A model generated the notes under the pieces. The model was not told the DNA's origin and did not search any database. It saw nothing but the letters and a program-made list of their open reading frames with translations. From positions 3,658,001 through 3,722,000 of the forward strand of contig CATNEN010000012.1 in the NCBI GenBank assembly GCA_950097015.1: a stretch of 64,000 nt of DNA. The letters are read 5' to 3'. The position numbers were made by a program, and so were the translations under genes. Shown piece after piece: positions 3,609 through 42,700 of this stretch. Every line of letters starts with the position of its first letter. The first letter of the stretch is position 1. This DNA is from Macrostomum hystrix. Its lineage: Eukaryota; Animalia; Platyhelminthes.

Positions 3609-4360
<752 letters not shown>

Positions 4361-18741: not shown

Positions 18742-21700
18742 TTACCTGGCAGAATTCGTCGACCGTTTAAACAATGTCGGCAGCCGCAGACTCGGACCAC
18801 CGTGCTTTTGACCAGCAGTTCCAACTCCACTGGCTTCCAAAAGTTGCTGATGCTCCTGAAGGGGATCAGCTGGTGGCAGGCGGTACAGGTGGTGACTGCG
18901 ATGCCGGTGATGCGGAAGCCGATGACGCCGGCTGGTCTCGCCGGTGTGGTCTCGACGACCCGACTGTGACTCATCTGTGGCCGCCTCCGGCTGCTGCTGT
19001 GTGGCGTCCAGCTTTGAAAAGGGGAGTCGATTTTAAGTCGGTTAGTATTTGTCTTTTAACAATAAGCATTGAATGCAATTTGTTCGTATTGCGAAAATGC
19101 TGTGTAAAACTGTGCATATTACTTGTAGTAGACAAATAAATTCGTAACTTAGTAAACTTTAACTGAGAAGTATAGGTTCTTTACTACTAGTGCCAAAAAG
19201 AATTTTTTATGAAGGTTTTTAAAGGCGAGTCACGCAGAATTTCTCTAAAAAATGCGAAAATATGTTTTTTAAAATCAATCAGGATTCGAGCCGGTGTCAC
19301 CGCCACGCGACGACTGGCTACTGTCTTGGCCTCTAGGCTATTTCATAGATCAAGATAAACGTTAAGTTAAGGTCGATTTAAACCGCCATCCTACGACACA
19401 AAAAACACGAGATTTTTTTTACATTGTTTTTGACAATATACAGCAGAACAGACTCCTTTGAATATTAAAACACAACAACTGAAATTCCGCTAAAATTTCC
19501 GCTGAGGCTGAAATCTAAGGTTGAGTATAGCATAATTCCCCACACCTGCAATGTTAGGCCCATTTTTAGTCCCAGTTGTTATTATTAAAAAGCATGGCGC
19601 AATAATGAAATTGCGTTCCATTCCACCGCTCTACATCCAAGGTTAGAAGGGAAACTAAATAAACCATTACGTTTGTGTAGGACAGATCTATCAACGAATA
19701 ATCTGCATGTCAGTGTTACGTCTAGAAAAATTAAAAATAGAAAAATATTAAGTCTAAAAATGCACCAATAAATAATAATTAATACTTTTAAAATATTAAA
19801 TATCAAATAACGTGTCAAAGAACAATGGATAACAGAAGGAACAACATCTAATGGCTTTCCTGCCAGTGCCTACTTTAAGTAGAGTAAGGTATAATTAGTC
19901 CAATCAATACGTATCTTTTTACTAAAAAAGTACTTTCTAAGAGAAGAGCTGCAAAGAAACTAAAGAAACAGTGCGTATTATATTTTAAATAGTTAGTTTA
20001 CAAGAAAGGATAACCAAACTAGAACTTTTCAACATAAGGCCCCACATCACAAACAAAAACAACATTCCACTACGATAACTAGGTATCTCAAAAACGCAAT
20101 ACATTCATTTCGATAGATTGCAATGTGAATCTACGTATTCAGTAACTCTGGTTTCTCTTCATTCCACGCTTAAATCTTTCGCCTTTTACTAAAGATTTCC
20201 GTGGAGAGGTACATTCATTGAGTGTTCCTTGATTTGTGCAACCCCATTCCTAGAAGGGGGTACTTTTAAAGTACACCAGTAAGCTCCCTATAGTGCTCCT
20301 TGTTCATTCTCACCTGTTTTAGTTTTATTTTTGCAGTCTCTCTCTCCCCCTGTACTTGTAGTTTTAGTTTTATTCTAGCAGTCCCCCACCCCCTCCCTTG
20401 AGTGCGCACTTTGTGTGCCACCTGCCCCCTTTGCTTATTTTGTTTACCTTGCACCAGTGAGAAATCACGCCATATGGCTGCGAATCGCGCCACAACTTCA
20501 AAAAAACACGACGGCCGCCCCTCGCTCGAGCATCGGTACGGCCGCACCGAAGACGCCAGTCGCAAGCTGCAGCCGAAGGTCGCGACAGCGCTGATGTCGA
20601 CTCCGATGCCGGCCAGCGAGACCTCTGAACCGGCAACCAGCACCCAAGACCGCGGCTCGCTCAGCCCACCAGAAGGTCGGCTAGTGATAGTCGAGGACGA
20701 GTCTCAAGCAGTGACTGCGGCCCCCGAGACTGCGGACTCAAACGAGACGGCCGACAGAATGTCCGTCGATGAAGCCGAGGCAGCCGAGACGGCTGCTCAA
20801 CAGACTGAGGCTGCGGCAGCACCTGCGACAGCGCCAACAGCATCCGAGTCGGCTGCGAGTGCCCAGACGACAATTCCGAAGCCCACCGCTGCACAGTCAG
20901 ACGCCGACATCTCGCAGATCGTCTTCCCTGACGAGCCGGACTTCAGCGAGTGCCAGCAGACGACCTACGCGGGCGACTGCACCATCGTCTACGCGCCCTA
21001 CTTTCTTGGCGAGGTCGCTGACCAAATATACCAGCGCCTGATGGCAGACGTGCTCCCACTCGCCTTCCGTCATCGCCCGCACGAGCAGCGCCGTGTCTTC
21101 TGGATCGGCCCGGCGTACACCTACAGCGGGGTTGAGCTGAAGGAGAATCAAACCTGGCATCCAGTAATCGAAGACATTCGTGACTTCCTTTACGACGATG
21201 CTGGGCTCGAGGTCCCGAAGTTCAACTCCGTTCTGGTGAACTTCTACACCGAGCCGGAGGACCGGATTCCGTGGCATGCGGATGACGAGGAGGAGCTCGG
21301 CGACAAGCCGACCATCGCTACAGTGTCGTTCGGCGCTGAGCGAACTTTTATGTTGCGTCGACGTGACGGAAACGTCACGCATCGATTTCAGACGCTCCCG
21401 GGATCGCTGATCCTCATGGGAGGCAATTGTCAAAAGCGGCTGCAGCATCAGGTGCCTGCAGTTCGCACCCAGACCGGCGTCCGCATCTCACTGACGTTCC
21501 GCGTCACCAAGCCGGAGCTGCGGCGCAAGAGGGCGGCGACCGACGACCCAACCTACAGCCAGCCACTGGACTGCGGTCCCTTCGGCGACCGGCAAGGCAA
21601 CCCAGGCCAGCCCCAGGACCAGCAGGCAGAGCGCGGCGGCGGCGGTCAGCGCGGCGCACGTGGTCAGCGCGGCGGCGGCGGTCAGCAGCGAGGCAGCCGC

Positions 21701-24700
21701 GGTGGCGGCGGCGGCAGACAGCGAGGCACGCGAGGTGGCGGCGGCGGCCGAGGTGCGGCGGCTGGTGCGGCGGCAGCGTCGGCGACCGCGGTGACGGGTT
21801 CGTCGGCGGCGTCGGCGGCGGCGGCAGCGGCGGCTGCTTCAACGACCCAGGCTGCGACAGCGCGGCCCTATGCGCAGGTGGCTTCGGCCCGCGCTCCATT
21901 GCGAAGACCCCAGGCTGCCATTCCACCGGTGGTCTTTGAAGTGCACCGAAACGCGGCGGGCAAGCTGGTGGCCTTCATCACCTGGCTGCAGGCCAACTTT
22001 GCCGGCGATGCCCGTGCCGTCAACACAGCCGAAATGGCCAATCAGCCCGCCTACCTAGTATTCCCGGCCACTGAGCGGGATTACAACGTCTTCCTAGGCG
22101 GTGCTCTGCGTCAGGACAGCCTCCTCGGACACCGTGTCGAGCGTCGACCAGCACGATCACGGCCGCTGGACAACCGGACTGGCGCTGACAGAGTACGGCA
22201 GCAGCCACTGCTCACCTTTGTGGCGCTCGACGTGCCGTTTTCCTTCACGGAAGCCGAATTCGCCAGCATGCTCCGCGAGTCCCTGAAGCTCGACATCACG
22301 AGTGTGCATCGGATCCGTGCGCGAGCATCCGGGCAGGCCACCCGGTACATGCGCATCTTTACGAAGTCGAGAGCGACATTCGACCAGTGCCTTCGCGAAG
22401 GCATCTGCACTGACTTTCTGAAGTTCAGCTGCGAAGAGAGCCGCACCGACGAGCCGGTCCGCGCCCTGCAGTGCCAGCGCTGCCAGCAGTTCGGCCACCG
22501 TGCAGCTCAGTGCCAGGTGGAGCTGCGATGCCGAATCTGCGGCGGCTCGCATGCCTGGAAGGACTGCCAGCACGAAGGCCCGGCGACATGCTCCAACTGC
22601 GGTGGTCAGCACCGCACGACCAGCCGAGCCTGCACTGTTGCGCAGGAGGAGCACGCCAAGGCGACGAAGGCGGCAGCTGAGGCCAAAGCTGCTGCGGCGC
22701 GAGCTGCGGAAGCCGCGGCTACGGATGCTCCGCCTGCCTCGAGTGCGCCCGCCGACGTGTCCGACGCTTCGGACAGTGGCTGGCTGATGCGCCAAGGCCG
22801 CCGCAACGTGCCCGTCAATGCCGCCATCCGGCCGCTGTTCATCAGCAACGATGATGCCAGGAGCCGACCGGCTGCCGAGACTGTCAGCGCCAGGTGCACG
22901 AGCGCCAATGAGGCTGCACCCTCCCTGGACGCTGGCAGTGAGCCACAGCAGCAGCAGCAGACTGACTTGAAGCAGATGGTGAGCATGCTGTTGCCCCTGA
23001 TCACCCGCTCTCTGACCCAGGTGATTGTGCGGGCCCTGTCCAGGCCGCCTGGTGAGCTCCTCACAGTGGAATCGACCAGTAAAATGGTTGAGGACATTGT
23101 GCGGGCTGTCCTCCAGGACGTGTCTGGCATGGCCTCCACCGCCACCGTGGTCGTGGGCCCAGGCAGCTAAACCAGAAAACTGTAAATTCCTCAATTTAAA
23201 TGGGAACCCTATTACCCAGACAACGGGTCTGAAAATTATGCACCTCAACTGCAGAGGGTTTCACCCGAAAAGCAGAGAACTCACCCAATGGGTCATTAGT
23301 CAAGAGATAGACATTGCTCTCTTCTCTGAAACCATTCTCAAGAGTTCGCACACGGTCCAGATCCCTGGCTACTCCATCATCCGGTACGACACTCCGCAAG
23401 TCAGACGCGGCCTGCTCCTTGCTCACTCACCGCGCGTGAAACTCACAAATGTTCGCTTGCACTACGACAATGTGAACCATGAAGCCATCTCCTGCACCGT
23501 CAGCCTGTCTGACAACTCCCACGGTGCCGACTTTAATCTGGCTCTGGTGTACAGGTCTCCGGCACCTTACCACCTGAACCTGAACCTGCTCAAGAGCCTG
23601 GTCTCGCGCAGACGCAGTGTTCTCCTTGGCGACCTCAATGCCAGACACCGCTTCCTTGGCGGTGACAGCAGCAACAACAGGGCTGGCCATGAGCTGTACG
23701 ACTGGCTCTCTGAAGGTCTGGCCTCGCCCACCATCCTCAATCAAGTTGGCCAGTTCACCAGAATCGCCACCAAAAATGGCGTCACTTCCAGGAATGTCTT
23801 GGACCTCGGCCTGGCCACGGAGGACTTTCTGCCCTTTGTGCAGGACTTTGCAGTCGGTCCCGACCTGGACAGCGACCACCTGCCAATCATCCTCACCCTC
23901 AACATTCAGTCGGCAAAGTGGGCAGGTCCCGCTAAGCCGAAAAACTTTTCCAAAACCGACTGGGATCAGTTCAGGCTGAAGATCAGTGAAGCCCTTCTTC
24001 CTGACCAGCCGACTCGCCTATCGAGTGCTCAGCAAATCGACGCCGAGGTCGAGCTCATCACAAAGGCCATCCACACGGTCATTGAGTCGACTGTGCCAGA
24101 CTGTGGTGGCCGAAATGCTCTGCCCAAGCACATCCTTGAGCTGATTAGAGAGCGCCGACGACTCAGACGCCTCTTCAACAGCACCCGGGATGAAAACTTT
24201 AAAAGGCTGGCCAACCAAATGGCCAACAGGATCAAAAGGGAAATTACGTCCTTCCAGAGCGGCAAGCTCACCAAGCTGTGTGAGAATGTTGTCGAGAACA
24301 GCAAGAACAGCAAGGTCAAGAACTTCTGGCATGACACCAGGAAGCTGATGGGCAAGTTCAAGCCCAGCTCCATCCCAACCCTCACTTCGGGTCAAACCAG
24401 TGCGCACACTGATCTGGAGAAAGCGAACCTTCTCGCTGCCACTCTGGACTCAAAGATGCGCCCAGTCCCATCCACTTGCGAGCAGCTCAAACAGGAGGTG
24501 GCCGAAGTGGCCAAGTTCATCGCTTTCTATCCGATTCCGGCCGACATCAATGGCATAGCCACTCACCCGCTTGAAGCCGCATTCACTGTAGCCGACACAG
24601 TGTGGGAGCTTGAGCACCTCAAGCCTGATGGAGCACCCGGGCTGGATAAGATTCCCAATCGAGTGCTCAAACTCGGCCTTGAAGGCGTGGCGATCACCAG

Positions 24701-27700
24701 GATCACCAAACTCTTTAACGCCTGCTTCAGTCAAGGGATCTTCCCCAGCGCTTGGAAGAAAGCTGTGGTGACAATGATCCCGAAGCCTGACAAACCGCCA
24801 GACAATCCAAACTCGTACAGGCCAATCAGCCTGACCTCTTGCTTAGGCAAGGTGTTTGAGAAGCTGATTGCCAAGAGACTCTCCAAATACCTTGAGGACA
24901 AGAACATTCTTGGCGATGACCAATGCGCTTATCGCAAAGTCCACTCCACCTACGACAACCTGTGCCGACTGGTGCAGGACATGATGGTCGCAAAGTGCAA
25001 AGCAAAGAGGGCCGCTGCAGTCTTCCTTGATGTAGAGGCGGCCTTTGACTCTGCCTGGCACGACATGCTCAGGAGCCGCATGCTCAACGCTGGCTTTCCT
25101 TCAATGCTGACGCGCATCCTGTCTGACTACCTCAGGAACAGGTACATCCAGGTGCGAGTCAACAACTCGCTCAGTGAGCTGATCAGAATCCTAGCTGGCG
25201 TACCTCAGGGAGGCATCTTGAGTCCTCTCCTGTACCTGCTGTACGTCAGCACAATGCCGATTCCTGAGAATCCAAACGTGAAACGCAGTCAATTTGCTGA
25301 CGACATGGCCATCTGGGCCTCCGCAGACACCTTTGCTGGTCTGCGGACATGCCTCCAGAGCTACCTCAGACAAGTCTGGGAGTGGTGCGGAAAGCAAGGC
25401 ATCAGACTGAATGCCGACAAGAGCAAGGCCATCGCCTTCAACTACAAGCCGACAGCTCGCGCCGACTTGCGACCCAAACTGCAGCTGGGGCAGACGGTGG
25501 TCCCCTACTGTCAGGAAGTAAAATTTCTAGGTGTCCTCCTCGACGCCAATCTTTGCCTGAATAAACACGTCGACAACATGGCGAACACGTGCAGGGCCAT
25601 TGTCATGTCCCTGTGCCGCATCGCCAAGATCACCAAACTGAGCAGCGTCACTCTCAGAATGCTGTACAGGGCCTACGGTGAGAGCGCTCTCACCTACGGC
25701 GCCCCAATCTTGACTCTGATCTGCGTCACCAATCAGATCAAGCTACAAAAGATCCAGAACCTTGCTCTGCGAATCTGCTACGGTGTGCCTTCCTACCTGA
25801 GCACCGAGTACCTTCACAAAATGGCCGGCATGCCAATGCTCTCGGCCAGAGTCAAACAGCTCGGTGTGGCCTGGCTGCTCAAGATGAGAGCAGCTCGACT
25901 GCACGGCTTCCACATCGAGCCGGAGCTGCCTCGCGCTCCGGGCCGAGTCCCCATCCTCAATGTCCTGTGGGCTACCCTGAGGCGGGGACAAATCAACAGG
26001 CAGAACCGACTCCAAATCCAGGGTTGAGCAGTCTCTGACAACTATGGCCCTGAAAGAAAAACCAAAATGAAACTCAAATAGCTGCCTGAGCTCAAGAGGG
26101 CTGGTGAGCAGTGCTCAGCTGCTATGATATTATATTCTTTACGTTTTTCAAACTGATTAACGTGATTTTATTGCCTAAAAAGTACTTTTTGCTTTTGTTA
26201 TGTTGCTATTTGCTCATAAACTGCTAGCTCTTTACACACCAGAGTTTTTAATTCCCAAATAAATCCTTTCTTTTTACTTTTGCCTATTTTTATACGTAAT
26301 ATGTACCGCATTGCCTAGAAATGTTTTTAATTCGCATTTCATGGTTTAATTTACTATTTTTATTTTCTATTTTTGCTAACAAATATTCTAATTGCTTTTA
26401 ATTGCGCTCACAAATATCTTGCATGCATGCCTTTTAGATTTCCCTTTTTTATTAGATCCCTTCTTTGTGCGGGATTCCCTTTGTATATTTCTCCCCTTTT
26501 ATCTTCCAATGCGTGCCCAAATATTGCCAAATATTGAATTATTGTTTTATTGTTTTATTTTTATTTTCAATATTCGTATAATCCAGATCGAAACGCTTGT
26601 ATATTTTAAATAAATTTCGATTAAATATATTAAAAAATATAGCGGCAGAGTTCCTCGGAACTGACCCGCTCCCCAGTACTTCGGGGAATTCGTTTTAACA
26701 ACAAAGATTTCCGTGGAGAGGTACATTCATTGAGTGTTCCTTGATTTGTGCAACCCCATTCCTAGAAGGGGGTACTTTTAAAGTACACCAGTAAGCTCCC
26801 TATAGTGCTCCTTGTTCATTCTCACCTGTTTTAGTTTTATTTTTGCAGTCTCTCTCTCCCCCTGTACTTGTAGTTTTAGTTTTATTCTAGCAGTCCCCCA
26901 CCCCCTCCCTTGAGTGCGCACTTTGTGTGCCACCTGCCCCCTTTGCTTATTTTGTTTACCTTGCACCAGTGAGAAATCACGCCATATGGCTGCGAATCGC
27001 GCCACAACTTCAAAAAAACACGACGGCCGCCCCTCGCTCGAGCATCGGTACGGCCGCACCGAAGACGCCAGTCGCAAGCTGCAGCCGAAGGTCGCGACAG
27101 CGCTGATGTCGACTCCGATGCCGGCCAGCGAGACCTCTGAACCGGCAACCAGCACCCAAGACCGCGGCTCGCTCAGCCCACCAGAAGGTCGGCTAGTGAT
27201 AGTCGAGGACGAGTCTCAAGCAGTGACTGCGGCCCCCGAGACTGCGGACTCAAACGAGACGGCCGACAGAATGTCCGTCGATGAAGCCGAGGCAGCCGAG
27301 ACGGCTGCTCAACAGACTGAGGCTGCGGCAGCACCTGCGACAGCGCCAACAGCATCCGAGTCGGCTGCGAGTGCCCAGACGACAATTCCGAAGCCCACCG
27401 CTGCACAGTCAGACGCCGACATCTCGCAGATCGTCTTCCCTGACGAGCCGGACTTCAGCGAGTGCCAGCAGACGACCTACGCGGGCGACTGCACCATCGT
27501 CTACGCGCCCTACTTTCTTGGCGAGGTCGCTGACCAAATATACCAGCGCCTGATGGCAGACGTGCTCCCACTCGCCTTCCGTCATCGCCCGCACGAGCAG
27601 CGCCGTGTCTTCTGGATCGGCCCGGCGTACACCTACAGCGGGGTTGAGCTGAAGGAGAATCAAACCTGGCATCCAGTAATCGAAGACATTCGTGACTTCC

Positions 27701-30700
27701 TTTACGACGATGCTGGGCTCGAGGTCCCGAAGTTCAACTCCGTTCTGGTGAACTTCTACACCGAGCCGGAGGACCGGATTCCGTGGCATGCGGATGACGA
27801 GGAGGAGCTCGGCGACAAGCCGACCATCGCTACAGTGTCGTTCGGCGCTGAGCGAACTTTTATGTTGCGTCGACGTGACGGAAACGTCACGCATCGATTT
27901 CAGACGCTCCCGGGATCGCTGATCCTCATGGGAGGCAATTGTCAAAAGCGGCTGCAGCATCAGGTGCCTGCAGTTCGCACCCAGACCGGCGTCCGCATCT
28001 CACTGACGTTCCGCGTCACCAAGCCGGAGCTGCGGCGCAAGAGGGCGGCGACCGACGACCCAACCTACAGCCAGCCACTGGACTGCGGTCCCTTCGGCGA
28101 CCGGCAAGGCAACCCAGGCCAGCCCCAGGACCAGCAGGCAGAGCGCGGCGGCGGCGGTCAGCGCGGCGCACGTGGTCAGCGCGGCGGCGGCGGTCAGCAG
28201 CGAGGCAGCCGCGGTGGCGGCGGCGGCAGACAGCGAGGCACGCGAGGTGGCGGCGGCGGCCGAGGTGCGGCGGCTGGTGCGGCGGCAGCGTCGGCGACCG
28301 CGGTGACGGGTTCGTCGGCGGCGTCGGCGGCGGCGGCAGCGGCGGCTGCTTCAACGACCCAGGCTGCGACAGCGCGGCCCTATGCGCAGGTGGCTTCGGC
28401 CCGCGCTCCATTGCGAAGACCCCAGGCTGCCATTCCACCGGTGGTCTTTGAAGTGCACCGAAACGCGGCGGGCAAGCTGGTGGCCTTCATCACCTGGCTG
28501 CAGGCCAACTTTGCCGGCGATGCCCGTGCCGTCAACACAGCCGAAATGGCCAATCAGCCCGCCTACCTAGTATTCCCGGCCACTGAGCGGGATTACAACG
28601 TCTTCCTAGGCGGTGCTCTGCGTCAGGACAGCCTCCTCGGACACCGTGTCGAGCGTCGACCAGCACGATCACGGCCGCTGGACAACCGGACTGGCGCTGA
28701 CAGAGTACGGCAGCAGCCACTGCTCACCTTTGTGGCGCTCGACGTGCCGTTTTCCTTCACGGAAGCCGAATTCGCCAGCATGCTCCGCGAGTCCCTGAAG
28801 CTCGACATCACGAGTGTGCATCGGATCCGTGCGCGAGCATCCGGGCAGGCCACCCGGTACATGCGCATCTTTACGAAGTCGAGAGCGACATTCGACCAGT
28901 GCCTTCGCGAAGGCATCTGCACTGACTTTCTGAAGTTCAGCTGCGAAGAGAGCCGCACCGACGAGCCGGTCCGCGCCCTGCAGTGCCAGCGCTGCCAGCA
29001 GTTCGGCCACCGTGCAGCTCAGTGCCAGGTGGAGCTGCGATGCCGAATCTGCGGCGGCTCGCATGCCTGGAAGGACTGCCAGCACGAAGGCCCGGCGACA
29101 TGCTCCAACTGCGGTGGTCAGCACCGCACGACCAGCCGAGCCTGCACTGTTGCGCAGGAGGAGCACGCCAAGGCGACGAAGGCGGCAGCTGAGGCCAAAG
29201 CTGCTGCGGCGCGAGCTGCGGAAGCCGCGGCTACGGATGCTCCGCCTGCCTCGAGTGCGCCCGCCGACGTGTCCGACGCTTCGGACAGTGGCTGGCTGAT
29301 GCGCCAAGGCCGCCGCAACGTGCCCGTCAATGCCGCCATCCGGCCGCTGTTCATCAGCAACGATGATGCCAGGAGCCGACCGGCTGCCGAGACTGTCAGC
29401 GCCAGGTGCACGAGCGCCAATGAGGCTGCACCCTCCCTGGACGCTGGCAGTGAGCCACAGCAGCAGCAGCAGCAGACTGACTTGAAGCAGATGGTGAGCA
29501 TGCTGTTGCCCCTGATCACCCGCTCTCTGACCCAGGTGATTGTGCGGGCCCTGTCCAGGCCGCCTGGTGAGCTCCTCACAGTGGAATCGACCAGTAAAAT
29601 GGTTGAGGACATTGTGCGGGCTGTCCTCCAGGACGTGTCTGGCATGGCCTCCACCGCCACCGTGGTCGTGGGCCCAGGCAGCTAAACCAGAAAACTGTAA
29701 ATTCCTCAATTTAAATGGGAACCCTATTACCCAGACAACGGGTCTGAAAATTATGCACCTCAACTGCAGAGGGTTTCACCCGAAAAGCAGAGAACTCACC
29801 CAATGGGTCATTAGTCAAGAGATAGACATTGCTCTCTTCTCTGAAACCATTCTCAAGAGTTCGCACACGGTCCAGATCCCTGGCTACTCCATCATCCGGT
29901 ACGACACTCCGCAAGTCAGACGCGGCCTGCTCCTTGCTCACTCACCGCGCGTGAAACTCACAAATGTTCGCTTGCACTACGACAATGTGAACCATGAAGC
30001 CATCTCCTGCACCGTCAGCCTGTCTGACAACTCCCACGGTGCCGACTTTAATCTGGCTCTGGTGTACAGGTCTCCGGCACCTTACCACCTGAACCTGAAC
30101 CTGCTCAAGAGCCTGGTCTCGCGCAGACGCAGTGTTCTCCTTGGCGACCTCAATGCCAGACACCGCTTCCTTGGCGGTGACAGCAGCAACAACAGGGCTG
30201 GCCATGAGCTGTACGACTGGCTCTCTGAAGGTCTGGCCTCGCCCACCATCCTCAATCAAGTTGGCCAGTTCACCAGAATCGCCACCAAAAATGGCGTCAC
30301 TTCCAGGAATGTCTTGGACCTCGGCCTGGCCACGGAGGACTTTCTGCCCTTTGTGCAGGACTTTGCAGTCGGTCCCGACCTGGACAGCGACCACCTGCCA
30401 ATCATCCTCACCCTCAACATTCAGTCGGCAAAGTGGGCAGGTCCCGCTAAGCCGAAAAACTTTTCCAAAACCGACTGGGATCAGTTCAGGCTGAAGATCA
30501 GTGAAGCCCTTCTTCCTGACCAGCCGACTCGCCTATCGAGTGCTCAGCAAATCGACGCCGAGGTCGAGCTCATCACAAAGGCCATCCACACGGTCATTGA
30601 GTCGACTGTGCCAGACTGTGGTGGCCGAAATGCTCTGCCCAAGCACATCCTTGAGCTGATTAGAGAGCGCCGACGACTCAGACGCCTCTTCAACAGCACC

Positions 30701-33700
30701 CGGGATGAAAACTTTAAAAGGCTGGCCAACCAAATGGCCAACAGGATCAAAAGGGAAATTACGTCCTTCCAGAGCGGCAAGCTCACCAAGCTGTGTGAGA
30801 ATGTTGTCGAGAACAGCAAGAACAGCAAGGTCAAGAACTTCTGGCATGACACCAGGAAGCTGATGGGCAAGTTCAAGCCCAGCTCCATCCCAACCCTCAC
30901 TTCGGGTCAAACCAGTGCGCACACTGATCTGGAGAAAGCGAACCTTCTCGCTGCCACTCTGGACTCAAAGATGCGCCCAGTCCCATCCACTTGCGAGCAG
31001 CTCAAACAGGAGGTGGCCGAAGTGGCCAAGTTCATCGCTTTCTATCCGATTCCGGCCGACATCAATGGCATAGCCACTCACCCGCTTGAAGCCGCATTCA
31101 CTGTAGCCGACACAGTGTGGGAGCTTGAGCACCTCAAGCCTGATGGAGCACCCGGGCTGGATAAGATTCCCAATCGAGTGCTCAAACTCGGCCTTGAAGG
31201 CGTGGCGATCACCAGGATCACCAAACTCTTTAACGCCTGCTTCAGTCAAGGGATCTTCCCCAGCGCTTGGAAGAAAGCTGTGGTGACAATGATCCCGAAG
31301 CCTGACAAACCGCCAGACAATCCAAACTCGTACAGGCCAATCAGCCTGACCTCTTGCTTAGGCAAGGTGTTTGAGAAGCTGATTGCCAAGAGACTCTCCA
31401 AATACCTTGAGGACAAGAACATTCTTGGCGATGACCAATGCGCTTATCGCAAAGTCCACTCCACCTACGACAACCTGTGCCGACTGGTGCAGGACATGAT
31501 GGTCGCAAAGTGCAAAGCAAAGAGGGCCGCTGCAGTCTTCCTTGATGTAGAGGCGGCCTTTGACTCTGCCTGGCACGACATGCTCAGGAGCCGCATGCTC
31601 AACGCTGGCTTTCCTTCAATGCTGACGCGCATCCTGTCTGACTACCTCAGGAACAGGTACATCCAGGTGCGAGTCAACAACTCGCTCAGTGAGCTGATCA
31701 GAATCCTAGCTGGCGTACCTCAGGGAGGCATCTTGAGTCCTCTCCTGTACCTGCTGTACGTCAGCACAATGCCGATTCCTGAGAATCCAAACGTGAAACG
31801 CAGTCAATTTGCTGACGACATGGCCATCTGGGCCTCCGCAGACACCTTTGCTGGTCTGCGGACATGCCTCCAGAGCTACCTCAGACAAGTCTGGGAGTGG
31901 TGCGGAAAGCAAGGCATCAGACTGAATGCCGACAAGAGCAAGGCCATCGCCTTCAACTACAAGCCGACAGCTCGCGCCGACTTGCGACCCAAACTGCAGC
32001 TGGGGCAGACGGTGGTCCCCTACTGTCAGGAAGTAAAATTTCTAGGTGTCCTCCTCGACGCCAATCTTTGCCTGAATAAACACGTCGACAACATGGCGAA
32101 CACGTGCAGGGCCATTGTCATGTCCCTGTGCCGCATCGCCAAGATCACCAAACTGAGCAGCGTCACTCTCAGAATGCTGTACAGGGCCTACGGTGAGAGC
32201 GCTCTCACCTACGGCGCCCCAATCTTGACTCTGATCTGCGTCACCAATCAGATCAAGCTACAAAAGATCCAGAACCTTGCTCTGCGAATCTGCTACGGTG
32301 TGCCTTCCTACCTGAGCACCGAGTACCTTCACAAAATGGCCGGCATGCCAATGCTCTCGGCCAGAGTCAAACAGCTCGGTGTGGCCTGGCTGCTCAAGAT
32401 GAGAGCAGCTCGACTGCACGGCTTCCACATCGAGCCGGAGCTGCCTCGCGCTCCGGGCCGAGTCCCCATCCTCAATGTCCTGTGGGCTACCCTGAGGCGG
32501 GGACAAATCAACAGGCAGAACCGACTCCAAATCCAGGGTTGTGCAGTCTCTGACACCTATGGCCCTGAAAGAAAACCAAAATGAAACTCAAATAGCTGCC
32601 TGAGCTCAAGAGGGCTGGTGAGCAGTGCTCAGCTGCTATGATATTATATTCTTTACGTTTTCAAACTGATTAACGTGATTTTATTGCCTAAAAAGTACTT
32701 TTTGCTTTTGTTATGTTGCTATTTGCTCATAAACTGCTAGCTCTTTACACACCAGAGTTTTTAATTCCCAAATAAATCCTTTCTTTTTACTTTTGCCTAT
32801 TTTTATACGTAATATGTACCGCATTGCCTAGAAATGTTTTTAATTCGCATTTCATGGTTTAATTTACTATTTTTATTTTCTATTTTTGCTAACAAATATT
32901 CTAATTGCTTTTAATTGCGCTCACAAATATCTTGCATGCATGCCTTTTAGATTTCCCTTTTTTATTAGATCCCTTCTTTGTGCGGGATTCCCTTTGTATA
33001 TTTCTCCCCTTTTATCTTCCAATGCGTGCCCAAATATTGCCAAATATTGAATTATTGTTTTATTGTTTTATTTTTATTTTCAATATTCGTATAATCCAGA
33101 TCGAAACGCTTGTATATTTTAAATAAATTTCGATTAAATATATTAAAAAATATAGCGGCAGAGTTCCTCGGAACTGACCCGCTCCCCAGTACTTCGGGGA
33201 ATTCGTTTTAACAACAAAGATTTCCGTGGAGAGGTACATTCATTGAGTGTTCCTTGATTTGTGCAACCCCATTCCTAGAAGGGGGTACTTTTAAAGTACA
33301 CCAGTAAGCTCCCTATAGTGCTCCTTGTTCATTCTCACCTGTTTTAGTTTTATTTTTGCAGTCTCTCTCTCCCCCTGTACTTGTAGTTTTAGTTTTAGTT
33401 TTAGTCTAGCAGTCCCCCACCCCCTCCCTTGAGTGCGCACTTTGTGTGCCACCTGCCCCCTTTGCTTATTTTGTTTACCTTGCACCAGTGAGAAATCACG
33501 CCATATGGCTGCGAATCGCGCCACAACTTCAAAAAAACACGACGGCCGCCCCTCGCTCGAGCATCGGTACGGCCGCACCGAAGACGCCAGTCGCAAGCTG
33601 CAGCCGAAGGTCGCGACAGCGCTGATGTCGACTCCGACGCCGGCCAGCGAGACCTCAGAACCGGCCAACAGCGCCCAAGACCGCGGCTCGTTCAGCCCAC

Positions 33701-36700
33701 CAGAAGGTCGGCTTGTCATCGTCGAAGACGAGCCTCCAGCAGTGACTGCGGCCCCCGCGACTGCGGACTCAAACGAGACGGCCGACAGAATGTCCGTCGA
33801 TGAAGCCGAGGCAGCCGAGACGGCTGCTCAACAGACTGAGGCTGCGGCAGCACCTGCGCCAGCGCCAACAGCATCCGAGTCGGCTGCTATTGCCCAGACG
33901 ACAATTCCGAAGCCCACCGCTGCACAGTCAGACGCCGACATCTCGCAGATCGTCTTCCCTGACGAGCCGGACTTCAGCGAGTGCCAGCAGACGACCTACG
34001 CGGGCGACTGCACCATCGTCTACGCGCCCTACTTTCTTGGCGAGGTCGCTGACCAAATATACCAGCGCCTGATGGCAGACGTGCTCCCACTCGCCTTCCG
34101 TCATCGCCCGCACGAGCAGCGCCGTGTCTTCTGGATCGGCCCGGCGTACACCTACAGCGGGGTTGAGCTGAAGGAAAATCAAACCTGGCATCCAGTAATC
34201 GAAGACATTCGTGACTTCCTTTACGACGATGCTGGGCTCGAGGTCCCGAAGTTCAACTCCGTTCTGGTGAACTTCTACACCGAGCCGGAGGACCGGATTC
34301 CGTGGCATGCGGATGACGAGGAGGAGCTCGGCGACAAGCCGACCATCGCTACAGTGTCGTTCGGCGCTGAGCGAACTTTTATGTTGCGTCGACGTGACGG
34401 AAACGTCACGCATCGATTTCAGACGCTCCCGGGATCGCTGATCCTCATGGGAGGCAATTGTCAAAAGCGGCTGCAGCATCAGGTGCCTGCAGTTCGCACC
34501 CAGACCGGCGTCCGCATCTCACTGACGTTCCGCGTCACCAAGCCGGAGCTGCGGCGCAAGAGGGCGGCGACCGACGACCCAACCTACAGCCAGCCACTGG
34601 ACTGCGGTCCCTTCGGCGACCGGCAAGGCAACCCAGGCCAGCCCCAGGACCAGCAGGCAGAGCGCGGCGGCGGCGGTCAGCGCGGCGCACGTGGTCAGCG
34701 CGGCGGCGGCGGTCAGCAGCGAGGCAGCCGCGGTGGCGGCGGCGGCAGACAGCGAGGCACGCGAGGTGGCGGCGGCGGCCGAGGTGCGGCGGCTGGTGCG
34801 GCGGCAGCGTCGGCGACCGCGGTGACGGGTTCGTCGGCGGCGTCGGCGGCGGCGGCAGCGGCGGCTGCTTCAACGACCCAGGCTGCGACAGCGCGGCCCT
34901 ATGCGCAGGTGGCTTCGGCCCGCGCTCCATTGCGAAGACCCCAGGCTGCCATTCCACCGGTGGTCTTTGAAGTGCACCGAAACGCGGCGGGCAAGCTGGT
35001 GGCCTTCATCACCTGGCTGCAGGCCAACTTTGCCGGCGATGCCCGTGCCGTCAACACAGCCGAGATGGCCAATCAGCCCGCCTACCTAGTATTCCCGGCC
35101 ACTGAGCGGGATTACAACGTCTTCCTAGGCGGTGCTCTGCGTCAGGACAGCCTCCTCGGACACCGTGTCGAGCGTCGACCAGCACGATCACGGCCGCTGG
35201 ACAACCGGACTGGCGCTGACAGAGTACGGCAGCAGCCACTGCTCACCTTTGTGGCGCTCGACGTGCCGTTTTCCTTCACGGAAGCCGAATTCGCCAGCAT
35301 GCTCCGCGAGTCCCTGAAGCTCGACATCACGAGTGTGCATCGGATCCGTGCGCGAGCATCCGGGCAGGCCACCCGGTACATGCGCATCTTTACGAAGTCG
35401 AGAGCCACATTCGACCAGTGCCTTCGCGAAGGCATCTGCACTGACTTTCTGAAGTTCAGCTGCGAAGAGAGCCGCACCGACGAGCCGGTCCGCGCCCTGC
35501 AGTGCCAGCGCTGCCAGCAGTTCGGCCACCGTGCAGCTCAGTGCCAGGTGGAGCTGCGATGCCGAATCTGCGGCGGCTCGCATGCCTGGAAGGACTGCCA
35601 GCACGAAGGCCCGGCGACATGCTCCAACTGCGGTGGTCAGCACCGCACGACCAGCCGAGCCTGCACTGTTGCGCAGAAGGAGCACGCCAAGGCGACGAAG
35701 GCGGCAGCTGAGGCCAAAGCTGCTGCGGCGCGAGCTGCGGAAGCCGCGGCTACGGATGCTCCGCCTGCCTCGAGTGCGCCCGCCGACGTGTCCGACGCTT
35801 CGGACAGTGGCTGGCTGATGCGCCAAGGCCGCCGCAACGTGCCCGTCAATGCCGCCATCCGGCCGCTGTTCATCAGCAACGATGATGCCAGGAGCCGACC
35901 GGCTGCCGAGACTGTCAGCGCCAGGTGCACGAGCGCCAATGAGGCTGCACCCTCCCTGGATGCTGGCAGTGAGCCACAGCAGCAACAGCAGCAGCAGACT
36001 GACTTGAAGCAGATGGTGAGCATGCTGTTGCCCCTGATCACCCGCTCTCTGACCCAGGTGATTGTGCGGGCCCTGTCCAGACCGCCTGGTGAGCTCCTCA
36101 CAGTGGAATCGACCAGTAAAATGGTTGAGGACATTGTGCGGGCTGTCCTCCAGGACGTGTCTGGCATGGCCTCCACCGCCACCGTGGTCGTGGGCCCAGG
36201 CAGCTAAACCAGAAAACTGTAAATTCCTCAATTTAAATGGGAACCCTATTACCCAGACAACGGGTCTGAAAATTATGCACCTCAACTGCAGAGGGTTTCA
36301 CCCGAAAAGCAGAGAACTCACCCAATGGGTCATTAGTCAAGAGATAGACATTGCTCTCTTCTCTGAAACCATTCTCAAGAGTTCGCACACGGTCCAGATC
36401 CCTGGCTACTCCATCATCCGGTACGACACTCCGCATGTCAGACGCGGCTTGCTCCTTGCTCACTCACCGCGCGTGAAACTCACAAATGTTCGCTTGCACT
36501 ACGACAATGTGAACCATGAAGCCATCTCCTGCACCGTCAGCCTGTCTGACAACTCTCACGGTGCCGACTTTAATCTGGCTCTGGTGTACAGGTCTCCGGC
36601 ACCTTACCACCTGAACCTGAACCTGCTCAAGAGCCTGGTCTCGCGCAGACGCAGTGTTCTCCTTGGCGACCTCAATGCCAGACACCGCTTCCTTGGCGGT

Positions 36701-39700: not shown

Positions 39701-42700
39701 CAGAACTGAACCGCGCCCCAGTCTTTTGGGGGATTTGTATTAACAACAAAGATTTCGGTGGAAATCCTGGGAAATTTCTGTTAAAGGAAATACCTCACAA
39801 TCTTATTTTTGGGGAATAAATTGGCCAACTAACTGAGAGCGATTGCAGCCGATATGTATCGAAAAATCTATTGCGCTCACCTTTACCAAGTGCTTAGCAA
39901 TCATTCGCCACCTGGGTAGCAGCAGGTGTCGCTGCAGAGTGAAAGCCAGAATGACCAATGGGAAGGCCAGGGCAGCGTAGGCCAGCTGCAGGAACTGCGC
40001 CAGGCAGTTCAGTGTCAGCAGCAGAAGCACGTGCAGCATCTGCAGGGTGGTGAAGGCTAGCAGGACGGCGCTGGGCACGTCCAGGTAGGACTTTGGCTGG
40101 CGATTCTTCTTTAACCGAAGCAGGTTAAATAGGCGATCAGTTAGCTGCAGATCAGACAGGGCTGATAGGCCCATGTAGAGAAACATACCTGGGCAGGTAG
40201 AGAATCGAGGATTGTAAATGTATTTGCTTTGCTATAAAAACAATGATTAGCTACTTCGTAATTAGTATTTGATTACACCTGCCCAAACTGAGCCACATGA
40301 GTTGCCGACAGATGTTCAGTCCATGGACTAGAGGGTCGCCACAGCCACCCTGAATTACCCCAGCTAATGCTGGCACCCATTTGCGAGTAACAGCTGGGTA
40401 AACTGAAGCAATGCAGAGTTAGGTGTCCCAATGAGATCAGGATTCGAATCCCCGACCTTAAAGTCGTGTATCCGACGCTCTAACCACTTTACTACAACCC
40501 TTCGCTCAACCAATGTTATAGATAAAACAAGCAATATTTAAATCAAGCTCGCTACTATGAGTAGGCAGTCCAGCTCACCGTCCATAGCGGCTAGGGGAAT
40601 GAGGCGCAGCAGGCTGGCAGCCAATACGGACGCGGCCAGCAGGGCTCCCACAGCCAGGCCGCTAGCCCGCTGCTCGGCCACGCCCAGGACCCGTCGCGGA
40701 CAGCCGGGAATGGGATTGGCCGGGTCCGACAGGGTCAGCACCCGGACGTGCGTGTGCGAGCGGACGGTGGCGGCGGTGACCAGCGGCCAGCCGAGCAGGC
40801 CATGCAGAGGCGGAGCCAGAGCGGCGATCAGCGCCAGGTTGAGGTGATGGCCGGTGGGTTTGGCCAGCCGCTTGCCTAGCCCGATGCCGCATAGGCCAGT
40901 CTCTGTGAATAACACAACTGCGGTGCAGGCCCCGATGAGCAGGGCGATGAGGTGCCCGGAGGCTCCGATGGCGGCCAGCTCGGCGGTGCTGGGAAGGCGA
41001 GGCGACAGGCCGGACAGAAGCTGGCCGAGATCGCCGCTGAGCTGGTTGAGGTGAGACGGCGTTCTTAGAAACCGCAGTTCAATAGAAGGCGAGATGGAAA
41101 TTGGGTGGAAAAAAGACAGGATGAGATTCAGATAAGACAGGATGAGATTCAGATAAGACAGGATGAGATTCAGATAACACAGGATGAGATTCAGATAACA
41201 CAGGATGAGATTCAGATAACACAGGATGAGATTCAGATAACACAGGATGAGATTCAGATAAGACAGGATGAGATTCAGATAAGACAGGATGAGATTCAGA
41301 TAACACAGGATGAGATTCAGATAACACAGGATGAGATTCAGATAACACAGGATGAGATTCAGATAACACAGGATGAGATTCAGATAACACAGGATGAGAT
41401 TCAGATAAGACAGGATGAGATTCAGATAAGACAGGATGAGATTCAGATAACACAGGATGAGATTCAGATAACACAGGATGAGATTCAGATAAGACAGGAT
41501 GAGATTCAAATAACACAGGATGAGATTCAGATAACACAGGATGAGATTCAGATAACGCAGGATGAGATTCAAATAACACAGGATGAGATTAAAATAACAC
41601 AGGATGAGATTCAGGTAGTTCAGGGTGAGATTCAGATAACACAGGATGAGATTCAGGTAGTTCAGGGTGAGATTCAGATAACACAGGATGAGATTCAGAT
41701 AACGCAGGATGAGATTCAGATAACGCAGAATGAGATTCAGATAAGACAGGATGAGATTCAGATAAGACAGGATGAGATTCAGATAACACAGGATGAGATT
41801 CAGATAACACAGGATGAGATTCAGATAAGACAGGATGAGATTCAGATAACACAGGATGAGATTCAGATAAGACAGGATGAGATTCAGATAAGACAGGATG
41901 AGATTCAAATAACACAGGATGAGATTCAGATAACACAGGATGAGATTCAGATAACGCAGGATGAGATTCAAATAACACAGGATGAGATTAAAATAACACA
42001 GGATGAGATTCAGATAAGACAGGATGAGATTCAAATAACACAGGATGAGATTCAGATAACACAGGATGAGATTCAGGTAGTTCAGGGTGAGATTCAGATA
42101 ACACAGGATGAGATTCAGGTAGTTCAGGGTGAGATTCAGATAACACAGGATGAGATTCAGATAACGCAGGATGAGATTCAGATAACGCAGGATGAGATTC
42201 AGATAACACAGAATGAGATTCAGATAAGACAGGATGAGATTCAGATAACACAGGATGAGATTCAAATAACACAGGATGAGATTCAGGTAGTTCAGGGTGA
42301 GATTCAGATAACACAGGATGAGATTCAGATAACGCAGGATGAGATTCAGATAACACAGAATGAGATTCAGATAATACAGGATGAGATTCAGATAAGACAG
42401 GATGAGATTTAGGTAGTTCAGGGTGAGATTCAGGTAGGTCAGGTTGAGGATTCAGATAGGACTTAGGTAGACCTTACCTGTAACGCGGCGAGGCTGTGAT
42501 GCCGCATGGCGGTGTTCGCCAGCAGGGTGATGACAGCAATGGCCAATGGCACGTTTAGTCCGGCGATAAGGTCCCGGGTTCGACGGCCCAGATAGTTGCC
42601 CCGCTTGAACTGCAGGATCCTCAGCGCCAGCAGCGCTGTCGCCAGCGTCAGGAAGGCGGCGCCGGCCGCGTCTCCGGCCAGCTGGGTGAACATTCGCACA

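What the first reader, a model, noticed from the sequence alone, without database searches (positions are those of the whole stretch)
20978..21502. Intact-looking AlkB (ALKBH2/3-like) dioxygenase domain inside LINE ORF1
Seen: ORF1 of all three copies (20978-21502, 27490-28014, 34009-34533) contains YTYSG, FNSVLVNFY, H-A-D (21275-21283), IATVSFG, a distal H (LQHQVP) and R-x5-R (RISLTFR). It is in frame with the zinc knuckles, intronless, and identical in protein across copies although copy 3 differs elsewhere. Known: these are the Fe(II) ligands (HxD...H) and 2-oxoglutarate-binding arginines of the AlkB family; ALKBH2/3 remove m1A and m3C, marks that block reverse transcriptase; some plant RNA viruses fuse AlkB to their replicase. 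Inference: the element packages its own RNA/ssDNA demethylase to repair its template or erase host methyl marks. This is an unusual ORF1 cargo.
Basis: partly seen in the sequence, partly recalled or inferred. Interest (0 to 1): 0.9.

Follow-up and report, generated by a model that had tools for sequence, protein, structure and literature searches.

The report
LINE ORF1 protein carrying AlkB dioxygenase
A jumping gene (LINE) that sits in U5 snRNA genes of a Macrostomum-type flatworm has a complete, selectively maintained AlkB/ALKBH3-type nucleic-acid demethylase built into its RNA-binding ORF1 protein, suggesting that methyl damage or methyl marks on RNA or single-stranded DNA limit its copying.

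Summary
All three tandem copies encode one uninterrupted ORF1 of 898-900 aa. It holds an AlkB domain (Pfam PF13532, E 1.1e-22; human ALKBH3, E 1.4e-24), an RGG linker, two RRM-like folds and three CCHC knuckles. An APE+RT ORF2 follows.

The AlphaFold model (pLDDT 93) superposes on ALKBH3 at TM 0.80-0.85. The HxD...H iron triad, the NxxxxNxY motif and the RxxxxxR motif are all present.

Identity among the three copies proves little, because they are young. The real evidence for function is comparative:
- Against the Macrostomum lignano sister family (77% nt identity), dN/dS of the AlkB domain is 0.12-0.13. That is as low as ORF2 (0.10) and well below the ORF1 termini (0.30-0.42).
- The same AlkB-ORF1 architecture persists in relatives whose ORF2 is only 39-56% identical.
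- All retroelement AlkBs form one clade (support 99/98). The donor is unresolved.

Enzyme activity, substrate and benefit are inferred, not shown. The most likely role is in-cis removal of m1A/m3C-type lesions, which block reverse transcriptase, from the element's RNA or cDNA.

I found no description of this in the searchable literature. The nearest precedents are plant-virus AlkB and an orchid Gypsy AlkB. This scan had already noted AlkB-ORF1 LINEs on other DNA of the same genome (s1-084969, s1-084965).

The parts
20143..20261 (+). Complete U5 spliceosomal snRNA gene directly upstream of the first LINE copy. Its 3' part (from 20191) is the segment repeated at every copy junction.
   Evidence: Rfam RF00020, 82.4 bits, model positions 1-117 of 117. 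Junction alignment. Sequence.
20191..26702 (+). LINE copy 1. The repeat unit is the U5 3' part, then 5'UTR, ORF1, ORF2, and a 3'UTR ending ...TTAACAAC.
   Evidence: Direct repeats with period 6512-6522. Junction alignment. Three-copy alignment.
20474..23170 (+). ORF1 of copy 1, 898 aa. Order of parts: disordered N-terminus, AlkB, RGG linker, two RRM-like folds, three CCHC knuckles, C-terminal helical region.
   Evidence: Translation. Motif coordinates. Pfam. AF2 and Foldseek tandem-RRM hits for the middle part.
20954..21520 (+). AlkB/ALKBH3-type Fe(II)/2-oxoglutarate dioxygenase domain, copy 1. H268-x-D270 lies at 21275-21283, the distal H325 at 21446-21448, and R337/R343 within 21482-21502.
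   Evidence: Pfam E 1.1e-22. PDB ALKBH3 E 1.4e-24. AF2 pLDDT 93.4. Foldseek TM 0.80-0.85 to ALKBH3. All 17 invariant columns of a 40-sequence alignment kept.
21635..21754 (+). Gly/Arg-rich (RGG-type) low-complexity linker between the AlkB domain and the RRM-like domains.
   Evidence: Regular-expression match on the translation. Variable in length and composition among relatives.
21926..22444 (+). Two RRM-like (beta-alpha-beta-beta-alpha-beta) domains of ORF1.
   Evidence: AF2 model of 21881-22660, mean pLDDT 75, two beta-alpha-beta-beta-alpha-beta units. Foldseek best hits are tandem-RRM proteins, E 1e-6. Conserved blocks across 7 ORF1s.
22472..22633 (+). Three CCHC zinc knuckles of ORF1.
   Evidence: Pattern matches CQRCQQFGHRAAQC, CRICGGSHAWKDC and CSNCGGQHRTTSRAC. 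Pfam zf-CCHC E 0.009, below the cut-off.
23238..26027 (+). ORF2 of copy 1 from its first ATG, an AP-endonuclease plus reverse transcriptase. The frame is open from 23025 and is +1 relative to ORF1.
   Evidence: Pfam RVT_1 E 1.9e-34, Exo_endo_phos_2 E 4.8e-11, Exo_endo_phos E 2.2e-5. First ATG located.
27490..28014 (+). AlkB domain core of copy 2, nucleotide-identical to copy 1.
34009..34533 (+). AlkB domain core of copy 3, with one synonymous difference from copies 1 and 2.
26703..33221 (+). LINE copy 2. It differs from copy 1 by 2 substitutions and a few indels. Its ORF2 stop is mutated, so ORF2 reads 14 codons further.
33222..39747 (+). LINE copy 3, a different subfamily. Its 3'UTR is about 15% diverged and its ORF1 N-terminus is diverged, but the ORF1 core is nearly identical. 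It is followed by only 15 nt of U5-like sequence (39748-39762).

Best explanation
The window holds three head-to-tail copies of an active-looking APE-type LINE. The element lives in U5 snRNA genes of a Macrostomum-type flatworm.

Its ORF1 protein is a standard RNA-chaperone ORF1 (two RRM-like domains plus three CCHC knuckles). An ancestor added an N-terminal ALKBH3-type Fe(II)/2-oxoglutarate dioxygenase and an RGG linker.

Proposed mechanism: ORF1p coats the RNA that encoded it, which concentrates many AlkB domains on the LINE ribonucleoprotein. There the domain oxidatively removes N1-methyladenine, N3-methylcytosine and similar lesions. These arise only on single-stranded nucleic acid and stall or mislead reverse transcriptase. 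Possible substrates are the RNA template, the exposed first-strand cDNA, and single-stranded target DNA. The gain would be a higher yield of full-length, correct copies. That matters for an element restricted to a handful of target genes.

Shown: the domain, its predicted fold, all catalytic and cofactor residues, purifying selection as strong as on the RT, a single origin, and long retention across diverged retroelement families.

Inferred: catalytic activity, substrate, action in cis, and the benefit to retrotransposition.
For: Domain identity:
- Pfam PF13532 E 1.1e-22.
- The PDB sequence search returns only ALKBH3 (1.4e-24) and ALKBH2 (1e-17).
- AF2 pLDDT 93.4, pTM 0.90. Foldseek top hits are human ALKBH3 bound to ssDNA/3mC, TM 0.80-0.85.

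Catalytic integrity:
- All 17 invariant columns of a 40-sequence AlkB alignment are kept, including R46, N96, Y98, H108, D110, H165, R177 and R183 in domain numbering.
- NxxxxNxY, HxD, the distal H and RxxxxxR are present in all 12 retroelement AlkBs examined.

Selection. Window against three (near-identical) M. lignano copies gives dN/dS of 0.12-0.13 for AlkB, 0.10 for ORF2, 0.14 for RRM+CCHC, 0.30-0.34 for the N-terminus and 0.42 for the C-terminus, at dS about 0.8-1.0.

Long retention. The same AlkB-then-RRM-then-CCHC ORF1 followed by APE/RT occurs in relatives with ORF2 identity of about 80% (L005/L007), 56% (L014), 41% (L001) and 39% (L004).

Single origin. Retroelement AlkBs form one clade, SH-aLRT 97 and UFBoot/SH-aLRT 99/98.

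LINE context:
- ORF2 has APE and RT. ORF1 has tandem RRM-like folds and knuckles.
- ORFs are intact in all three copies.
- Copy 3 belongs to another subfamily, so it inserted at this site independently.

Precedent. Plant-virus AlkB domains repair m1A/m3C and prefer RNA (PMC2553587).

Weak hint of transcription. Four runs of the same organism, returned when RNA runs were asked for (library kind only guessed), hold 63-78% of the ORF1 31-mers.
Against: - There is no biochemical or genetic evidence of activity, substrate or effect on retrotransposition.
- The dN/dS rests on essentially one pairwise comparison, since the M. lignano copies are near-identical to each other, and dS is close to saturation.
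- The family has a loop 5 residues shorter than other retroelement AlkBs (more against cellular AlkBs), between the long N-terminal helix and the conserved Arg of the substrate-recognition part. Its effect is unknown.
- Most LINEs manage without such a domain, so the selective problem it solves in these animals is unexplained.
Confidence: 0.6

Rival explanations
1. Epitranscriptomic counter-defence. The AlkB domain erases methyl marks that the host installs for regulation (m6A, or regulatory m1A) from the LINE RNA. This would let the RNA escape reader-mediated decay, sequestration or chromatin silencing. It would not be repairing chemical damage.
For: An orchid Ty3/Gypsy lineage carries an AlkB protein with in-vitro m6A demethylase activity (PMC9289625). 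m6A writers and erasers modulate L1 retrotransposition in human cells (PMC7873242, abstract seen). The catalytic residues are intact here.
Against: The domain is of the ALKBH2/3 repair type. It is not the m6A-demethylase type that the orchid-Gypsy paper describes. At E<=0.001 the PDB sequence search returns only ALKBH3 and ALKBH2. The 50 best Foldseek hits are ALKBH3, ALKBH2, ALKBH6, E. coli AlkB, ALKBH8 and Ofd2, with no ALKBH5 or FTO. No m6A activity was tested.
Confidence: 0.2
2. DNA-side repair. The domain acts on single-stranded target DNA or first-strand cDNA during target-primed reverse transcription. It would remove 3-methylcytosine, for example the off-target product of the host DNMT1/DNMT3, which Macrostomum retains together with ALKB2.
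For: The best structural matches are ALKBH3 bound to ssDNA and to 3mC-containing ssDNA. A review states that M. lignano keeps DNMT1, DNMT3 and ALKB2, and that DNMTs generate 3mC (PMC9246332).
Against: ORF1p is built as an RNA-binding protein (RGG, RRM-like folds, knuckles), which favours RNA as the first substrate. Nothing shows that ORF1p stays at the integration site. This reading overlaps the best explanation rather than excluding it.
Confidence: 0.12
3. Non-catalytic or passenger domain. The AlkB fold serves only as an extra nucleic-acid-binding or oligomerisation module, or it is a neutral hitch-hiker captured from a host mRNA.
For: No activity has been shown. LINE ORF1 proteins tolerate many different N-terminal additions.
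Against: Iron ligands and 2OG-binding residues are invariant in all 12 retroelement AlkBs, although overall identity falls to 33-48%. dN/dS of 0.12-0.13 equals that of the RT. The domain is retained in lineages whose ORF2 is only 39-56% identical.
Confidence: 0.06
4. Not part of the element. The AlkB stretch is a host gene or exon that merely abuts the LINE, or an assembly chimera.
For: None found.
Against: There is one uninterrupted 898-aa frame from the ATG through AlkB to the knuckles, in three copies. The same fusion appears in the M. lignano genome assembly and in independent Logan assemblies. The host-type ALKBH3-like gene of M. lignano has its AlkB-coding part split over two blocks about 2.4 kb apart, so it evidently contains an intron, and it is only about 45% identical.
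Confidence: 0.02

Closest known systems
Human ALKBH3 (PDB 2IUW, 8JNK, 8JNR, 9NCZ) and ALKBH2
   Same: Same fold and subfamily. Sequence E 1.4e-24, about 32% identity, TM 0.80-0.85. Identical Fe(II) triad HxD...H, NxY and RxxxxxR 2OG-binding residues.
   Different: ALKBH3 is a stand-alone cellular enzyme of about 286 aa encoded by an intron-containing gene. Here the domain is an intronless module inside a 898-aa retrotransposon ORF1, with a shorter loop in the N-terminal substrate-recognition part. Its activity is untested.
AlkB domains of plant RNA viruses (Flexiviridae and others; van den Born et al. 2008, PMC2553587; Bratlie & Drablos 2005, PMC544882)
   Same: A selfish RNA-based replicator has built an AlkB repair dioxygenase into one of its own proteins. 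The viral enzymes remove m1A/m3C and prefer RNA, and they are proposed to keep the genomic RNA copyable. This is the best functional analogue.
   Different: In the viruses the domain sits in the replicase polyprotein of plant RNA viruses. Here it sits in the RNA-coating ORF1 protein of an animal LINE that copies RNA into DNA. I did not test whether the two are specifically related.
AlkB-carrying Ty3/Gypsy LTR retrotransposons of Phalaenopsis orchids (PMC9289625)
   Same: A retrotransposon lineage acquired an AlkB-family dioxygenase.
   Different: That case is an LTR element in plants, with a separate extra ORF. Its domain is close to AlkB proteins with m6A RNA demethylase activity, and m6A demethylation was shown in vitro. 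Here it is a non-LTR element in a flatworm, the domain is fused into ORF1, and it is ALKBH2/3-type.
LINE ORF1 proteins with an accessory enzymatic domain (esterase ORF1p of CR1/L2-type elements, PMC3905857)
   Same: The first ORF of a LINE carries an enzyme-like accessory domain beside its nucleic-acid-binding parts.
   Different: That domain is a lipid-directed esterase fold, not a nucleic-acid dioxygenase. I found no AlkB-type ORF1 in the searched literature.
snRNA-gene-specific LINEs Keno and Utopia (U2 snRNA; PMC4640811)
   Same: These are LINEs confined to a low-copy snRNA gene family, sometimes in tandem inside the target.
   Different: The target here is U5, not U2. That 2015 paper lists only U2, U1 and U6 as snRNA targets. 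Utopia uses a restriction-like endonuclease, and that paper does not mention any AlkB domain.

Membership tests
AlkB family, ALKBH2/3-type Fe(II)/2-oxoglutarate dioxygenases | Significant match to the family profile (Pfam PF13532, 2OG-FeII_Oxy_2) above the curated threshold | tested here: met
   81.6 bits against a cut-off of 31.2, E 1.1e-22, profile positions 49-194 of 194.
AlkB family, ALKBH2/3-type Fe(II)/2-oxoglutarate dioxygenases | Double-stranded beta-helix (jelly-roll) core with the N-terminal substrate-recognition extension, superposable on solved AlkB structures | tested here: met
   AF2 pLDDT 93.4, pTM 0.90. Foldseek finds ALKBH3 at TM 0.80-0.85, ALKBH2 at 0.77-0.83 and E. coli AlkB at about 0.7. 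This is a predicted model, not a solved structure.
AlkB family, ALKBH2/3-type Fe(II)/2-oxoglutarate dioxygenases | Fe(II) facial triad HxD...H | tested here: met
   H268, D270 and H325 of ORF1 align with the triad of ALKBH3. They are invariant in 40 AlkBs and in 12 retroelement AlkBs.
AlkB family, ALKBH2/3-type Fe(II)/2-oxoglutarate dioxygenases | 2-oxoglutarate-binding residues (N-x-Y before the HxD; R-x5-R at the C-terminal strand) | tested here: met
   N256, Y258, R337 and R343 are invariant.
AlkB family, ALKBH2/3-type Fe(II)/2-oxoglutarate dioxygenases | Oxidative demethylation of m1A/m3C in DNA or RNA | not testable with these tools
   Needs enzyme assays or alkB complementation.
APE-type non-LTR retrotransposon (LINE) with an RRM+CCHC ORF1 | ORF2 with AP-endonuclease and reverse transcriptase domains | tested here: met
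   RVT_1 E 1.9e-34, Exo_endo_phos_2 E 4.8e-11, Exo_endo_phos E 2.2e-5.
APE-type non-LTR retrotransposon (LINE) with an RRM+CCHC ORF1 | ORF1 with RRM-type fold(s) and CCHC knuckles upstream of ORF2 | tested here: met
   Three CCHC patterns. Two beta-alpha-beta-beta-alpha-beta units with tandem-RRM Foldseek hits, E 1e-6, from a model of moderate confidence (pLDDT 75). Pfam zf-CCHC alone is below its cut-off.
APE-type non-LTR retrotransposon (LINE) with an RRM+CCHC ORF1 | Multiple copies with defined ends, and related families elsewhere | tested here: met
   Three copies with the same ends, one of them from another subfamily. Tandem relatives lie next to U5 in M. lignano.
APE-type non-LTR retrotransposon (LINE) with an RRM+CCHC ORF1 | Placement of the RT in a named clade (Jockey, R1, CR1, I, ...) by phylogeny with reference elements | not tested
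   No reference RT set (Repbase) was available. Only indirect hints exist: Exo_endo_phos_2, no RNase H or other domain detected in ORF2, and a distant relative's ORF1 with PRE_C2HC.
m6A-eraser type AlkB (ALKBH5/FTO, or the m6A-demethylase-type AlkB proteins that the orchid Gypsy domain resembles) | Closest sequence or structure relatives are m6A demethylases | tested here: not met
   Only ALKBH3 and ALKBH2 pass E<=0.001 in the PDB sequence search. No ALKBH5 or FTO appears among the 50 best fold matches.

The most novel reading that the evidence does not exclude
One clade of AlkB domains has spread among unrelated classes of reverse-transcribing elements in flatworm-like genomes. It is found in several deeply diverged APE-type LINE families. 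In L003/L016 it also sits in the upstream ORF of a Penelope-like (RT + GIY-YIG) element.

That would mean base methylation of single-stranded RNA or DNA is a general, strong barrier to reverse transcription in these animals. The methylation could be chemical damage or a host-imposed mark. Retroelements would then repeatedly pay to carry their own eraser, making this a previously unrecognised axis of host-retroelement conflict.
Probability: 0.3. Interest if true: 0.85.

Novelty: new variant of a known kind. Interest (0 to 1): 0.72.

Why it matters
LINE ORF1 proteins are known as RNA chaperones. Apart from the esterase of CR1/L2-type elements, few enzymatic accessory domains have been described in them. 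A conserved nucleic-acid dealkylase in ORF1 would be the first sign that a non-LTR retrotransposon repairs or de-marks its own template.

It makes an open question testable: do methylated bases in RNA or single-stranded DNA (m1A, m3C) limit target-primed reverse transcription in vivo? It also parallels the AlkB domains of plant RNA viruses and of an orchid Gypsy element. Three very different RNA-based replicators would then have converged on the same solution.

Macrostomum lignano is a laboratory model with transgenesis (PMC5730564), and it carries the sister family. A compact ALKBH3-type domain that works while tethered to an RNA-coating protein might also be useful for reverse-transcription-based methods.

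Tried and rejected
- Whole-ORF1 word-index search. It returned one irrelevant hit (a Scenedesmus endoglucanase-AlkB protein), because low-complexity words swamped the candidate list. The exhaustive domain search replaced it.
- Exact look-up of the window's ORF1. It is not on record, so I could not link the window to particular runs.
- Read laying on 20143-26100.
- Donor of the domain. I asked whether the LINE clade is sister to the host ALKBH3-like gene (P0020) or to animal ALKBH3. In the 136-row tree the two lie in the same weakly supported group (support 84). In the careful 43-row tree the backbone is a polytomy. Capture from host ALKBH3 is therefore plausible but not shown, and I do not claim it.
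- dN/dS within the window. This was rejected as uninformative, because there is only one synonymous difference in AlkB.
- Organism of the Logan runs carrying the deeper relatives. A literature search for the run ids found nothing. A notebook search by sequence was blank. Their taxa remain unknown.
- Rfam scan of the relatives' contigs. Only the M. lignano loci show U5. No small-RNA gene was detected on the other contigs, so a general link between AlkB cargo and small-RNA-gene targeting is not established here.
- RT clade assignment. This was not possible without reference elements.
Full report
**What is in the sequence**

Window 20191-39747 consists of three head-to-tail copies, with a period of 6512-6522 nt, of a two-ORF retroelement. 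The array begins directly after a complete U5 snRNA gene at 20143-20261 (Rfam RF00020, 82.4 bits, full length).

Each copy junction repeats the 3' part of U5, from AAAGATTTCCGTGGAGAGG onwards. So the repeated unit is the U5 3' part, then 5'UTR, ORF1, ORF2 and 3'UTR. After copy 3 only 15 U5-like bases follow.

ORF1 runs from the ATG at 20474 to 23170 (898 aa). ORF2 is open from 23025, with its first ATG at 23238, and ends at 26027. Pfam finds RVT_1 (E 1.9e-34) and two AP-endonuclease models in ORF2, and 2OG-FeII_Oxy_2 (PF13532, E 1.1e-22, 81.6 bits against a 31.2 cut-off) in ORF1.

**Check of the observation**

The AlkB stretch is in the same uninterrupted frame as three CCHC knuckles at 22472-22633. 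It is identical in copies 1 and 2, and copy 3 differs by one synonymous base.

The copies are very young, though. Copies 1 and 2 differ at 2 positions. Copy 3 differs at 188 positions, mostly in the 3'UTR (about 15%) and the ORF1 N-terminus, while the ORF1 core differs at only 5 positions. Identity among the copies therefore says nothing about selection. It does show that copy 3 belongs to another subfamily, so it arrived at the same site independently.

**Is it really an AlkB?**

- A PDB sequence search at E<=0.001 returns only ALKBH3 (E 1.4e-24) and ALKBH2 (about 1e-17). The alignment puts H-A-D on ALKBH3's H-S-D, LQHQVP on WQHRVP and RISLTFR on RVNLTFR.
- In a 40-sequence alignment with diverse AlkBs, the window keeps all 17 invariant columns. 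These include the conserved Arg, N-x-Y, HxD, the distal His and R-x5-R.
- An AlphaFold2 model of 20954-21520 has mean pLDDT 93.4 and pTM 0.90.
- Its best PDB matches are human ALKBH3, including complexes with ssDNA and 3mC (TM 0.80-0.85), followed by ALKBH2. ALKBH6, E. coli AlkB, ALKBH8 and Ofd2 score lower. No ALKBH5 or FTO appears in the top 50.
- The family has a loop 5 residues shorter than other retroelement AlkBs (more against cellular AlkBs), between the long N-terminal helix and the conserved Arg.

**The rest of ORF1**

After the AlkB domain comes a Gly/Arg (RGG-type) tract at 21635-21754. Next is a region whose AF2 model (pLDDT 75) shows two beta-alpha-beta-beta-alpha-beta units. Its best fold matches are tandem-RRM proteins (E 1e-6). 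Three CCHC knuckles follow, then a C-terminal helical region. ORF1p is therefore an ordinary RRM-plus-knuckle LINE ORF1 with an AlkB module added at its N-terminal side.

**Relatives**

An exhaustive HMMER search of 1.84 billion representatives gave these best hits:
- Macrostomum lignano proteins at 81-85% identity.
- A set of long proteins of 757-962 aa from Logan assemblies at 36-48% identity.

The M. lignano loci L005 and L007 hold the sister family. They are 77.5% identical at nucleotide level over 5.1 kb, also arranged in tandem, and also adjoin U5. L007 has a full U5 at 9666-9781, immediately upstream of the LINE. L005 has the first 64 nt of U5.

The same ORF1 architecture, followed by an APE/RT ORF2, occurs in three further contigs:

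| Contig | ORF2 identity to the window | AlkB identity to the window |
|---|---|---|
| L014 | 56% | 63% |
| L001 | 41% | about 35-39% |
| L004 | 39% | about 40-45% |

All 12 retroelement AlkBs examined keep NxxxxNxY, HxD, the distal His and RxxxxxR. The organisms behind the Logan runs could not be determined.

**Selection**

A Nei-Gojobori comparison of the window with the M. lignano copies gives these values:

| Region | dN/dS |
|---|---|
| AlkB | 0.12-0.13 |
| ORF2 | 0.10 |
| RRM + CCHC | 0.14 |
| ORF1 N-terminus | 0.30-0.34 |
| ORF1 C-terminus | 0.42 |

dS is about 0.8-1.0. The AlkB domain is thus as constrained as the reverse transcriptase.

There are two caveats. The three M. lignano copies are nearly identical to each other, so this is effectively one comparison. 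And dS is high.

**Origin**

The retroelement AlkBs form one well-supported clade: SH-aLRT 97 among 136 sequences, and UFBoot/SH-aLRT 99/98 in a careful 43-sequence tree. This indicates a single acquisition.

The sister group is unresolved. An intron-containing M. lignano ALKBH3-like gene is a plausible donor type, but this is not shown. That gene is P0020, about 45% identical, with its AlkB-coding part split over two blocks about 2.4 kb apart in L006. M. lignano also has several other ALKBH3-like paralogues with long extensions of unknown nature.

**How it probably works**

ALKBH3-type enzymes and the AlkB domains of plant RNA viruses remove N1-methyladenine and N3-methylcytosine from single-stranded DNA and RNA. 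The viral ones prefer RNA and are thought to keep the genome copyable (PMC2553587). From general knowledge, these lesions form on unpaired bases and stall reverse transcriptases.

I infer that ORF1p coats its own RNA and so places many AlkB domains on the RNP. There they would clean the template, and possibly the exposed cDNA or target strand, before or during target-primed reverse transcription. That raises the yield of full-length copies, which is valuable for an element restricted to a few U5 genes.

I rate an m6A-eraser or counter-defence role lower, because the domain is not of the m6A-demethylase type. A role against DNMT-generated 3mC is possible, since Macrostomum keeps DNMT1/3 and ALKB2 (PMC9246332). 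A non-catalytic role is unlikely given the invariant catalytic residues. None of this has been tested experimentally.

**Comparison with what is known**

AlkB capture is known for plant RNA viruses (PMC2553587, PMC544882) and for one orchid Ty3/Gypsy lineage whose AlkB protein demethylates m6A in vitro (PMC9289625). LINE ORF1 proteins with an enzymatic accessory domain are known for the esterase type (PMC3905857).

Searches combining AlkB with non-LTR, ORF1, retrotransposon, Macrostomum, zinc knuckle, the Pfam name or Penelope-like found no description of an AlkB domain in a LINE ORF1. Repbase reports and subscription journals were not searchable. I therefore class it as a new variant of a known kind.

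The same scan had already noted, and twice followed up, AlkB-ORF1 LINEs on other pieces of this genome (s1-084969, s1-084965). One of those was described as lying next to the spliced-leader gene. The present family is a different one, tied to U5.

**Verdict**

The domain is real, complete, under purifying selection and anciently retained. Its activity and its role in retrotransposition remain to be shown.

Noticed in passing
window 20143-20261, 26703-26773, 33222-33292, 39748-39762; L007 9666-9781; L005 9059-9122: The LINE is tied to U5 snRNA genes. A full U5 precedes copy 1, and every copy starts with the U5 3' part, so U5 5' part plus element rebuilds a whole U5. Only 15 U5-like bases follow copy 3. 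The M. lignano sister family is likewise tandem and adjoins U5. A 2015 survey lists only U2, U1 and U6 as snRNA targets of transposons (PMC4640811). This is the subject of another note (s1-300405).
   Followed up: partly
L003 2120-5158 and 5266-7398; L016 3134-4843 and 4951-7083: An AlkB domain of the same clade as the LINE AlkBs sits in a 1012-aa proline-rich ORF without knuckles. That ORF lies directly upstream of a 710-aa ORF with weak RVT_1 and GIY-YIG hits and Atlas neighbours of the DUF8422/HTH_animal/RVT_1/GIY-YIG type. By my own knowledge, RT plus GIY-YIG marks a Penelope-like element. It was seen in two runs, with contigs 99.99% identical. The AlkB cargo may therefore exist in two retroelement classes.
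   Followed up: partly
window 33222-39747 versus 20191-26702: Copy 3 is a mosaic relative to copies 1 and 2. Its 3'UTR is about 15% diverged and there are 17 differences in the first 400 nt of ORF1, but only 5 differences in the next 2 kb (AlkB to knuckles) and about 1.5% in ORF2. This suggests recombination or template switching between subfamilies, or very uneven constraint.
   Followed up: partly
window 32539-32584 (end of copy 2 ORF2): In copy 2 the last base of the ORF2 stop codon is changed (A to T at the position equivalent to 26027). ORF2 therefore runs 14 codons further (1014 against 1000 aa).
   Followed up: no
window 3465-4400, 10113-10972, 14658-15535, 40966-42500, 49700-50299, 53326-53908, 58123-59277, 61125-62500: The window is crowded with short-period satellite arrays, with periods of 8, 20, 34, 21, 30, 27, 34 and 21 nt. 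These flank the GC-rich LINE array (about 55-66% GC over its ORFs, against about 40-45% around it).
   Followed up: no
M. lignano proteins P0077, P0211, P0212, P0173 (no window coordinates): M. lignano encodes several further ALKBH3-like proteins of 469 to 1309 aa, in which no Pfam family other than the AlkB domain was found. They lie outside the retroelement clade. It is unclear whether they are host genes or cargo of other mobile elements.
   Followed up: partly
window 21635-21754: A 40-residue RGG/RG tract links the AlkB domain to the RRM-like domains. In other families the linker is equally long but is Gln- or Ser-rich instead, so only its disorder seems conserved.
   Followed up: no
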